The notes below the pieces were generated by a model. It did not search any database and was not told where the DNA came from. It worked only from the letters and a program-made list of their open reading frames with translations. Below are positions 30,348 through 33,250 of a stretch of 64,000 bases of DNA, in pieces. The position numbers and the translations under genes were made by a program. Source of the stretch: Adineta vaga (taxonomy: Eukaryota; Animalia; Rotifera); assembly GCA_021613535.1 (NCBI GenBank), contig CP075495.1:8432001-8496000 (forward strand). Direction: 5' to 3'. Each line of letters opens with the position of its first letter. Position 1 is the stretch's first letter.

Positions 30348-33250
30348 TCACTGTCGTTCTTGAATGAATGGTTGTTCAAATGATTGTTTGATATTCAATC
30401 GTTTTTGAGGATCAAAAATAAGAATTTTGTCTAAGAAGTCTCGTAATTGTAAAACTTTCTTCATTTGATCTTCAGGTAAACGTTGATTTCCAATTAGAAG
30501 TGGTAATAAATCACGACAAGGATTAATATTCGTTATTGTTGATATTTTATCCTGAATAAGAAAAAAAAAACGAACAATTATACAAATAATCAATTGAAAG
30601 ATGAAATCAAGAGTTTTACTTACTCGTTCAGTTACTTTATCAACTTCATGATAAAGAAAATTACAATCGCGATCAAAATGTTTATCTTTCAATAAACCTT
30701 TTCGAATGATACGATTCGGTACTTTGCCTTTAAGATCCATCATTAATTTTAACATTTCATTATTTGATTTACCCGGAAACATAACTCGACCTGTATATAA
30801 TTCATAGACTGTCACAGCAACAGACCAAAGATCAATAGAAAAATCATATTGCATACCCAAAACTAAAATTAAAGAATCAAAATTTCCTTTTTCACTCTGC
30901 TCGTCTATTATCTACTTACTAATTTCTGGTGCACGATAGAATCGACTAACTAAATACGGTGTTATTTCACAATCAGATCCATATGATGCTGAACCAAAAT
31001 CACATAATTTCAAAGATAATTTTGTGTCATTCACTAAAATATTATCAGGCTTTATGTCTGCATGTAGAATATTGCATTTTTTCAAATGTTTTAATGCTAA
31101 CATTAATTGTAGTGTGTAAGAACGAACAGCTTTGATACTTAAACCCACATCTTTACCGTACTTCTTAAGTACTTCCCGTAAATTCATACTACAAACGAAA
31201 AACAAAATGAATTTTCACAGATTATATTTTGAAATAAAATCATACCTCAGTGGTTCGAAGACAAGACATAAATGATTTCGATGTGTAAAATGATCTAATA
31301 ATCGTAGACAATGATAGCGATCTTCAGAATCATTTTCGTTTAATTTGCGTAAATATTCCAATTCTTTCCAACCTGTTTTATTCCTAGAGAGAAATTGTAA
31401 TGAAAGAAATAATAAAGAGAAATGCAAACAGTTTTTGATACTTACATAAGTTCGTTATTTCGAATAATTTTAATGGCAACTTCAGTACTTCTTCCGTTGA
31501 TTTCTTCACGAGCTCGAACAACATTGGAGAAAACTCCTTGACCTGTGGATCCGAATACTTCAAAACGACCATTTAACATTTCTCCAATATGTACACCTAA
31601 ACAGAAACGTTTTTTTCTTTTCAAAATGACAAAAGTAATACATACGATAATATCCTTCTGAATCATCCCAATTATCCGTTAGGTGTGGATTTTCACTTTC
31701 TTTCGTATTTCCTTGACGACGTCGTGCACCGGGACTCTGTAGACAAAGGAAAGCAAATAAACTAGTCTTCATTCTAAATGATCTTTTACTTACATTATTG
31801 TCTAGATAATCAGCATCATCAGCAAACATATCATAATTGTTTGTAACAGCTTTACGTCGTTCTAATTCTTCATTTCGTAATTGATTTGTAATCGATGGAG
31901 AATTCGCATCATTGCCTGGCAGAGGTTCATCTAGATAAAGAGACAAATAGATGATGTTATTCGAGAAGAATTCATTGAAATATTTACCATTCATAGTTGC
32001 AGCTCGTTTATTTTGTGCACTTCGTTCGAAATCAATTCGTTCTTGTTCAATACAATAATTCAGAAATGCAGCTTGTTCATCTTCGTCATCATTATTAACG
32101 ATTTGATTTGTATTATTTTGAGTTGGTGTATTATCGTTTGTTGTTGGCGTTGATTGTTGAACTTGCATAGCATCACTATCTTTAGAAGAATCATCTATCA
32201 CTTCTTTATCAATCAATTTCTATGGAAGAAAAAGAAAATTAGATGTAGAAACTTATAAGAAATTCAACGTACTTGTTTCAACTGTTCACGTCGAAGTCGT
32301 TGTCGACGAATGATTTCTTCTTCGTTTTCTTCATCAGGAATTTCGATATCAACTCTATAGAAGATAATAATTCAGTAGGAAATTTTCTGTATAGAATAGA
32401 ATAAACTTACTCATCGTCATCACTAGATTTAGATTTGTCTTCACGAGATCTATGATGATTCGATCGTTTTGAATCATTATTATATCTTAAAGAAAATAAA
32501 AATAAAACATATTTTCAGTAAAACATCATGGATTAATTTACCTATTTGATGAATCAGAATCCAGAACAAGAACAAATTCTTTTGAATATTCACCAAATTT
32601 GATAGCATCATTTTCTTCTAATCTATAATATCGATTCGATTCTATACGACGTCGATTGATATATGTTCCATGAGTTGAATCTAAATCGATCAAATAAGGA
32701 TATATATGATGTCCATGAGAATCACTGCGAAGACGATACTGTAAAACAGCATGAATAATTGAACATGATGAATGAATGGTGTAAATGAATATCACATTGA
32801 TCTTTATCGCGTCCAAAAATATATTTCGATTGACGGTAAACACGATGACTTGAGGATTCATCATCTTCTTTAGAAACTGATAAACGCCAACGTTGATCAG
32901 GTGTACGAGCTTCCGATGGTTCTTTGTACAAAGATTTTAATCCATTTCGTGATGATGATGATGGTGGTGGTGGTGGTCGACGATGTGAAGTATTATCATC
33001 ATCGGAATGTGACGTTTCTAGATTAAAATAAAACTTACTAGTTAACTTATGATTATTAGGAGCCTTCTTTCACGAAACTAAGTGCATTGTGAAGTTCATT
33101 TTTCAAATTAAAAACTAAAGAATAAGAAAGAACCATACCTGAATGTTTAAAATTTTTATAATTGCGTGATGATTTTCGTTCTTCATCGGATGGTGAATGA
33201 TCGTATTTCTTCTTTCGCGTACTTGTTTCTTGTCTTGGTGATCGAGGCAT
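30348..33250 (-). CDS. PRPF4B: PRP4 kinase with an N-terminal SNIP1-like FHA exon (frameshifted in this copy)
   Basis: [41 protein letters not shown] and [11 protein letters not shown] are PRP4K signatures. Upstream exons carry an RS-like segment and the FHA domain. Confidence 0.9.
32542..33017 (-). other. SNIP1/Pml1-like FHA-domain exon within the PRP4K gene
   Basis: [66 protein letters not shown] and SKEFVL follow SNIP1-type FHA motifs. Flanked by canonical AG/GT sites. Confidence 0.85.

What the first reader, a model, noticed from the sequence alone, without database searches (positions are those of the whole stretch)
30348..33250. PRP4 kinase carrying an in-gene SNIP1/Pml1-like FHA exon: an apparent fusion of two spliceosome-activation factors
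Seen: exon 2 (33017-32542) of the PRP4K gene encodes a full SNIP1-type FHA domain, including its characteristic N-terminal YxEPxEAR..WRL extension. Its phase-1 and phase-2 boundaries match the flanking PRP4K exons, so skipping it would shift the frame. Known: PRP4K phosphorylates PRP6 and PRP31 during B-complex formation; SNIP1/Pml1 is the FHA subunit of the RES complex; the two are normally separate genes and PRP4K has no FHA. Inference: exon capture produced a phospho-reader-plus-kinase chimera. The GR and SxxH phosphothreonine-binding positions are retained.
Basis: partly seen in the sequence, partly recalled or inferred. Interest (0 to 1): 0.8.

Follow-up and report, generated by a model that had tools for sequence, protein, structure and literature searches.

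The report
Rotifer splicing kinase with SNIP1 head
In bdelloid rotifers the only copy of an essential splicing kinase (PRP4K) has lost its usual long arginine/serine-rich front end and carries instead a phospho-binding domain copied from another splicing factor (SNIP1); the fusion is transcribed, conserved across two genera and was not found in other animals.

Summary
Real and conserved. The window (Adineta vaga) holds the genome's only PRP4K gene. Its exon 2 encodes a SNIP1-type FHA domain. The assembly has 4 extra bases there (a frameshift), but all four public runs tested (3 RNA-like, 1 DNA) lack them. RNA contigs join exon 1 to the FHA exon and the FHA exon to the kinase exons, giving one 733-aa frame. 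The same FHA+PRP4K gene is annotated in eight Adineta and Rotaria species, with neighbours conserved where checked; none of 192 non-bdelloid PRP4Ks retrieved, including an acanthocephalan, has FHA. The FHA is under purifying selection. An intact stand-alone SNIP1 survives on another chromosome. The fused FHA lost SNIP1's RES-anchoring motif and Lys301 (needed for phospho-SF3B1 binding) but keeps a Rad53-like phosphothreonine pocket. Best reading: a repurposed docking module that recruits the kinase (about 55%); ligand untested. No paper or earlier scan note describes it. Didymodactylos and monogonont PRP4K were not retrieved.

The parts
33381..33498 (-). Non-coding 5' exon, spliced to exon 1; conserved acceptor and donor; contains upstream ATGs
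   Evidence: Joint 33381/33255 in two RNA runs; acceptor and donor conserved in 5 species; upstream ATGs all out of frame with the main ORF
33139..33255 (-). Exon 1: ATG at 33250, 37 codons, basic and Ser-rich, starts MPRSPR; probably SNIP1-derived; phase-1 intron
32542..33017 (-). Exon 2: SNIP1-type FHA domain with its N-terminal extension (aa 38-194), lacking SNIP1's EKPNFxLSGxL motif
   Evidence: Pfam FHA E 4e-11; orthologue's best PDB sequence hit human SNIP1 E 4.5e-31; AlphaFold pLDDT 89.7, Foldseek TM 0.84 to SNIP1; alignment
32769..32772 (-). 4-nt duplication in the assembly only (frameshift artefact; exact placement ambiguous within 32768-32779)
   Evidence: Left out in all 4 runs laid; absent from orthologues
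32411..32485 (-). Exon 3: first PRP4K-like exon (acidic linker)
   Evidence: RNA joints; frame
32273..32354 (-). Exon 4: [12 protein letters not shown] segment shared with other PRP4Ks
31646..32219 (-). Exons 5-7 (32219-31988, 31930-31794, 31736-31646): linker with PRP4K motifs MI (YDMFA) and MII ([12 protein letters not shown])
   Evidence: motifs defined in PMC8912934
30348..31596 (-). Exons 8-12 (31596-31446, 31383-31246, 31188-30920, 30862-30624, 30551-30348): intact PRP4K kinase domain; stop at 30350-30348
   Evidence: Pkinase E 3e-19 on exon 10; VAIK, helix-C Glu, [24 protein letters not shown] all present; only PRP4K in the genome
30062..30321 (-). Intron in the 3' UTR, beginning 26 nt after the stop; spliced and unspliced forms seen
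   Evidence: Loose ends of RNA contigs match 30061 onward
33594..34530 (-). Upstream neighbour: MRPL48-like (Ribosomal_S10) gene, same strand, stop 343 nt before the fusion's ATG; conserved neighbour (start coordinate approximate)

Best explanation
A bdelloid-lineage gene fusion. A duplicate of SNIP1 (its first exon and FHA domain) was joined in frame to the PRP4K gene and replaced the long RS-rich N-terminus. The product is the animal's only PRP4K, so it must do PRP4K's essential job: phosphorylating PRP6 and PRP31 during pre-B to B conversion (inferred from family knowledge). The duplicated FHA shed the motif that anchors SNIP1/Pml1 in the RES complex and changed its pocket from SNIP1's Lys type to a Rad53-like Arg/Ser/Asn/Ser set. 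It most likely works as a phosphothreonine-dependent docking module that brings or holds the kinase on the spliceosome, taking over the targeting role of the lost RS domain. Candidate ligands are the kinase's own phospho-Thr products on PRP6/PRP31 (processive docking) or Thr-Pro repeats of SF3B1. Shown: gene structure, splicing, single copy, conservation, selection, motif losses. Inferred: protein production, phospho-binding, ligand, direction and timing of the fusion.
For: RNA contigs span FHA to kinase stop and the frameshift is an artefact; 733-aa frame; single PRP4K and separate intact SNIP1. Same architecture in A. ricciae, A. steineri, R. socialis, R. magnacalcarata, R. sordida, R. sp. 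Silwood1/2 (40, 43, 46) and in three environmental lineages with the same exon order (one of these is a broken copy); synteny in three species. FHA dN/dS 0.15-0.35 over 15 pairs. G284-R285, S300, H303, K265 and E366 (human SNIP1 numbers) kept in 22/22; position 301 is Asn in 19/22 and position 334 Ser/Thr in 20/22 (75), matching Rad53 Asn86/Thr106, which contact pThr (PMC2615620). RES anchor homologous to Pml1 22-42 (PMC4515762) absent in 22/22. RS/SR dipeptides before motif MII: 2-8 in fused proteins, median 23 in other PRP4Ks; the RS domain is needed for speckle localisation (PMC8912934). A. vaga SF3B1 has at least 15 TP pairs.
Against: No binding or localisation data. The conserved FHA Asn (335) is His in 16, Ser 4, Thr 1, Gln 1, and A. 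vaga itself has Ile (Val allele in run X2) at 301, which could mean a relaxed pocket. Human K301G abolishes phospho-SF3B1 binding (PMC13194972), and in human CDK11 marks SF3B1 after PRP4K is displaced, so SF3B1 is not an easy ligand. The FHA evolves several times faster than the kinase exon (dN/dS 0.02-0.12) and about as fast as the linker. In yeast, Pml1 pocket mutants did not affect splicing.
Confidence: 0.55

Rival explanations
1. Same fusion, but the FHA acts as a phospho-independent interaction or autoregulatory module (binding a spliceosomal surface or its own linker or kinase).
For: Variable residues at positions 301 and 335; long stem branch of 1.25 substitutions per site (77); strand and loop residues outside the pocket well conserved; phospho-independent FHA contacts are known for SNIP1 (c-Myc; PMC13194972).
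Against: Arg285, Ser300 and His303 invariant in 22/22 copies and a Rad53-like Asn/Ser pair in most.
Confidence: 0.27
2. The FHA is a tolerated passenger: the fusion only supplied a promoter, start codon and basic nuclear-localising exon, and the domain is kept folded merely because skipping it breaks the frame.
For: dN/dS similar to the linker exon (79); exon skipping is out of frame, so exon loss is constrained.
Against: Domain length fixed at 116-117 codons, 65-89% identity across genera, invariant pocket residues, confident fold; in-frame erosion was possible but is seen only in a copy that is also broken in the kinase part (L020).
Confidence: 0.12
3. The fusion works as an alternative RES subunit, bringing kinase activity into RES and the Bact complex in place of SNIP1.
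For: K265, E366 and a basic residue at 365 are kept; Bud13 and SF3B1 are present in the genome.
Against: The Snu17/RBMX2-binding motif is missing in 22/22 fused copies and present in all full-length stand-alone SNIP1s examined; stand-alone SNIP1 is intact and highly conserved; K301 lost.
Confidence: 0.05
4. Two separate genes or an assembly chimera: a stand-alone or dead SNIP1 copy ending at the in-frame stop just inside intron 2, next to an independent PRP4K.
For: The assembly shows a frameshift; read-through into intron 2 meets a stop at once.
Against: Joint 32542/32485 in three RNA runs and unbroken contigs; DNA contig spans 31974-32943; the 4 nt are absent from reads; no in-frame Met between aa 1 and 265; same fusion in eight species.
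Confidence: 0.01

Closest known systems
PRP4K / PRPF4B (DYRK-related CMGC kinase)
   Same: Intact kinase domain, motifs MI and MII, EEIIRR segment, single copy; about 55-71% identity to other animal PRP4Ks over the matched part.
   Different: About 725 aa instead of a median 880; long KKHK/RS region replaced by a short basic exon plus FHA; no FHA in 192 non-bdelloid PRP4Ks.
SNIP1 / Pml1 / DAWDLE (RES-complex FHA subunit)
   Same: FHA with the YxEPxEAR..WRL extension; best sequence and structure matches; K265, GR, S300, H303, E366 kept.
   Different: RES-anchor motif lost, Lys301 and Asn335 replaced, shortened loop after QYRL, long stem branch, fused to a kinase; the real SNIP1 persists separately.
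FHA-kinases Chk2 / Rad53 / Dun1 / Mek1
   Same: FHA N-terminal to a Ser/Thr kinase; these are the nearest clusters by language-model features.
   Different: Those carry CAMK-group kinases and a different FHA lineage; here both halves come from spliceosomal proteins, so the architecture is convergent.
NIPP1 and kanadaptin FHA domains
   Same: S[TS]HGT motif with His at the usual Asn position, as in most fused copies.
   Different: Weaker matches (E 1e-12 to 1e-13 against 1e-31); outside the SNIP1 clade in the tree.

Membership tests
PRP4K | DYRK-related kinase domain with catalytic motifs | tested here: met
   VAIK, helix-C Glu, [24 protein letters not shown]; Pkinase; top hits all PRP4K
PRP4K | Motifs MI (DMFA) and MII (DNWxDxEGYYRV) before the kinase | tested here: met
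   aa 357-361 and 391-402; definition in PMC8912934
PRP4K | Long N-terminal RS/KKHK region | tested here: not met
   2-8 RS/SR dipeptides against a median of 23; region before MII about 380 aa against 612
PRP4K | Phosphorylates PRP6 and PRP31 | not testable with these tools
   Family knowledge only
SNIP1/Pml1 (RES subunit) | SNIP1-type FHA with N-terminal extension | tested here: met
SNIP1/Pml1 (RES subunit) | Snu17/RBMX2-binding motif upstream of the FHA (Pml1 22-42; EKPNFxLSGxL in animals) | tested here: not met
   Absent in 22/22 fused copies; homology of the animal motif to Pml1 29-65 rests on a weak but positionally consistent alignment
SNIP1/Pml1 (RES subunit) | K265, K301, R365 for two-phosphate SF3B1 binding | tested here: not met
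   K265 kept, R365 to Lys in 20/22, K301 lost in 22/22 (PMC13194972)
Phosphothreonine-binding FHA | Arg, Ser, His and pocket residues equivalent to Rad53 R70, S85, N86, H88, T106, N107 | tested here: inconclusive
   R, S, H invariant; Asn 19/22 and Ser/Thr 20/22 at the 86 and 106 positions; N107 position is His/Ser/Thr/Gln; A. vaga has Ile/Val at 86
Phosphothreonine-binding FHA | Measured pThr binding | not testable with these tools
   Needs a binding assay
Chk2/Rad53 FHA-kinases | CAMK-group kinase domain | tested here: not met
   The kinase is PRP4K

The most novel reading that the evidence does not exclude
Bdelloids rewired spliceosome activation: their sole PRP4K reads a phospho-mark (CDK11-made pThr-Pro on SF3B1, or its own marks on PRP6/PRP31) through a SNIP1-derived FHA, making a kinase relay or feed-forward loop that replaces RS-domain recruitment. 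This would be a natural experiment on how PRP4K is targeted and timed.
Probability: 0.35. Interest if true: 0.75.

Novelty: new variant of a known kind. Interest (0 to 1): 0.55.

Why it matters
PRP4K is essential and its layout (RS region plus kinase) is described as conserved from amoebae to humans (PMC8912934). How it is recruited and released is only partly known. A whole animal lineage that swapped the RS region for a reader domain taken from the next step of spliceosome activation offers a direct test of what the N-terminus is for, and whether phospho-docking can replace RS contacts. It also gives a natural SNIP1 FHA variant at Lys301, a residue just shown to be needed for SF3B1 binding. 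Practical value: the A. vaga reference has a frameshift error here, and its public model (I4U23_008391, 646 aa) has a wrong N-terminus. The limits: both parts are well-known domains, the architecture already sits unremarked in public annotations, domain fusions are common, and no function is shown.

Tried and rejected
The joined frame was built only inside scripts to check the frame, as one row of a local alignment and for dN/dS. Big protein search: used once, before the word searches, because exon-sized queries cannot reach full-length kin and the claim rests on distribution. A cryptic 57-nt intron across the frameshift was considered and dropped (it would not restore the frame; reads show a 4-nt deletion). 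Retrocopy origin from the missing GDQ|ELP intron: not supported, since D. carnosus SNIP1 is itself intronless. Relocation of the C2 SNIP1 ohnologue: compatible (C2 lacks SNIP1 at the homoeologous site near 7.99 Mb, and C5 lacks PRP4K near 9.98 Mb) but no relic was found. FHA tree placement: unresolved in the 52-row tree, with bdelloid SNIP1 in the 28-row tree (94/93), alternatives not rejected (AU p 0.16, 0.19; one search gave no answer). Full-length single-sequence AlphaFold was useless (pLDDT 37). The metagenome scan returned five GC-rich, intronless, unfused PRP4-like loci, none rotifer-like. No D. carnosus or Brachionus PRP4K surfaced in three word searches. YN00 mostly failed; NG86 values are used and probably understate dS. 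The bacterial promoter scan is irrelevant. Four Pfam calls failed on frame slips (4, 9, 12, 14, 17 corrected in 18). Four paper searches found no description of the fusion.

Full report
Setting. The window is C2:8,432,001-8,496,000 of a 100.8-Mb, six-contig genome. A public Adineta vaga model on a contig of the same length carries this gene's sequence (I4U23_008391), so the organism is the bdelloid rotifer A. vaga.

Observation. The minus-strand exon 33017-32542 has AG/GT borders and encodes a SNIP1-type FHA: its 3' piece hits Pfam FHA at E 4e-11 and its 5' piece holds the [11 protein letters not shown] extension and GR. As assembled it is 476 nt long and carries a 4-nt duplication near 32769-32772 that stops the spliced frame at aa 136. 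Four public runs from four studies, three RNA-like and one DNA, all lack those 4 nt, so the frameshift is an assembly error. All eleven coding introns are seen as joints. The FHA-to-exon-3 joint is in three RNA runs, the exon-1-to-FHA joint in two, and single contigs of 2063 and 2079 nt run from inside the FHA exon to beyond the kinase stop. These are assembled contigs, not single reads, and the RNA label is the tool's guess, but intron-free joints at GT-AG sites leave little doubt. With the 4 nt removed, twelve exons give one 733-aa frame; no Met lies between aa 1 and 265, and skipping exon 2 stops at aa 88.

Copy number. The kinase exon finds one PRP4K in the genome; the next hits are other kinases at 48% identity or less. 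A complete stand-alone SNIP1 lies on C5 near 10.484 Mb, 53% identical to the fused FHA piece; the third FHA hit looks like kanadaptin. The window's homoeologous block is on C5 near 9.98 Mb and lacks PRP4K; the C2 block matching SNIP1's neighbours (7.99 Mb) lacks SNIP1. Bud13 and SF3B1 are present. So the fusion is the only PRP4K, and RES keeps its own SNIP1.

Distribution. The three best relatives of the FHA piece among 1.84 billion representatives come from AT-rich environmental contigs that show exon 1, the FHA exon and PRP4K exons in the same order; one (L020/L021) is a decaying copy. Public models with FHA plus kinase exist for A. ricciae, A. steineri, R. socialis, R. magnacalcarata, R. 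sordida and R. sp. Silwood1 and 2, at 720-731 aa, and in three species checked the gene lies between the same neighbours (p62, MRPL48-like, TPT transporter). None of 192 other PRP4Ks retrieved has an FHA; these are nearly all animal sequences and a ranked sample, not a census. The acanthocephalan Pomphorhynchus has an unfused 640-aa PRP4K and no FHA in its 45-kb locus. Didymodactylos and monogonont PRP4Ks were not retrieved, so the fusion is dated only to before the Adineta-Rotaria split.

Origin. Fused FHAs form one clade (100/100) on a long stem of 1.25 substitutions per site inside the SNIP1 family. A smaller tree puts them with bdelloid SNIP1s (94/93), but other placements are not rejected. 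The start M-x-R-S-P-[KR] occurs in 23 fused sequences and in 5 of 174 SNIP1s, all in the bdelloid clade including D. carnosus, and in 0 of 192 other PRP4Ks. A. vaga SNIP1 also has a short basic first exon with a phase-1 intron. I therefore read exon 1 and exon 2 as a 5' SNIP1 duplicate that replaced the PRP4K N-terminus, not as an exon captured mid-gene. This is inference: exon 1 is low in complexity and alignment z-scores are only 0.1-3.6.

What changed. FHA dN/dS is 0.15-0.35 across 15 pairs, against 0.02-0.12 for a kinase exon and 0.1-0.4 for the linker. The A. ricciae orthologue's FHA folds confidently (pLDDT 89.7) and matches SNIP1 best (TM 0.84). In human numbering, G284-R285, S300, H303, K265 and E366 are kept in 22 of 22 fused copies; R365 is Lys in 20; K301 is Asn in 19, Thr in 2 and Ile in A. 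vaga; N335 is His in 16; all 11 stand-alone SNIP1s keep K301 and N335. K301G abolishes binding of human SNIP1 to phospho-SF3B1 (PMC13194972), but Asn at this place is what Rad53 FHA1 uses to bind pThr, and Ser/Thr at 334 (20 of 22) matches Rad53 Thr106 (PMC2615620). The EKPNFxLSGxL motif, which aligns weakly to Pml1 29-65 and so overlaps the Snu17-binding segment 22-42 (PMC4515762), is missing from every fused copy. On the kinase side, motifs MI and MII and all catalytic motifs are intact, while RS/SR dipeptides fall from a median of 23 to 2-8; the RS domain is what takes mammalian PRP4K to speckles (PMC8912934).

Mechanism. Shown: a transcribed, conserved, single-copy FHA-PRP4K under purifying selection, without the RES anchor and without the RS region. 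Inferred (about 55%): the FHA is a phosphothreonine docking module that recruits or holds the kinase on the spliceosome in place of the RS region. In human, PRP4K sits between SF3B3 and PRP6 in pre-B and is displaced after phosphorylating PRP6 and PRP31 (PMC11208138), while CDK11 marks SF3B1 later. Binding to its own products is therefore at least as plausible as binding to SF3B1, which has at least 15 TP pairs in A. vaga. Rivals: phospho-independent interaction (27%), passenger (12%), alternative RES subunit (5%), artefact (1%).

Known or new. Nearest architectures are Chk2/Rad53-type FHA-kinases, which use a different kinase group, so the layout is convergent. Four paper searches found no description of an FHA-bearing PRP4K, though the library misses many subscription papers, and the scan's own notes for this genome hold none. 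The architecture is visible in public Pfam annotations under plain PRP4 names. Verdict: a real, lineage-wide new variant of a known essential kinase; surprising to splicing specialists and directly testable, but built from two familiar domains and with no function yet shown. Interest 0.55.

Noticed in passing
window 33256-33932: RNA contigs run unbroken from the MRPL48-like last exon through its stop to 33381 and splice into exon 1. An AG acceptor at 33499 with no conserved upstream donor, the 5' exon and its donor are conserved in 5 species, and the gap is 320-343 nt in four. This looks like an operon with spliced-leader trans-splicing, or overlapping UTRs; p62, MRPL48, the fusion and a TPT gene are all on one strand.
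   Followed up: partly
window 33381-33498: The 5' exon has four upstream ATGs; one opens a 90-codon frame overlapping the main start; a short uORF (MNYFSSSTHIT) has a near match in L018 but is not kept in all species.
   Followed up: partly
window 30062-30321: 260-nt intron in the 3' UTR starting 26 nt after the stop; spliced and unspliced contigs both present.
   Followed up: partly
window 32759: DNA run X2 shows a variant that turns the Ile at the Lys301-equivalent pocket position into Val; other species mostly have Asn.
   Followed up: partly
L020 1-1865 and L021: A decaying copy of the fusion gene in another species: deletion and frameshift in the FHA exon and a stop in motif MII.
   Followed up: partly
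P0270, P0387, P0388: Annotation artefacts: the A. vaga model starts in the wrong frame because of the assembly error; two R. magnacalcarata models join part of MRPL48 to the fusion, probably a prediction error from the tight spacing.
   Followed up: partly
L024 10001-10870: Didymodactylos carnosus SNIP1 is intronless, whereas A. vaga SNIP1 has two introns.
   Followed up: no
L006 2000-6700; L044-L045: The SNIP1 and XPB pair on C5 has no counterpart in the homoeologous C2 block near 7.99 Mb; a second XPB-like match lies on C3 near 7.54 Mb.
   Followed up: partly
window 30561, 32504, 33085, 34106: Single-base differences in length between the assembly and DNA run X2, all in introns: alleles or further small assembly errors.
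   Followed up: no
L022 137-1921 (P0273); P0155: An environmental PRP4K with a tandem repeat of its kinase N-lobe, and a sturgeon SNIP1 model with a repeated half-FHA; both probably assembly artefacts.
   Followed up: no
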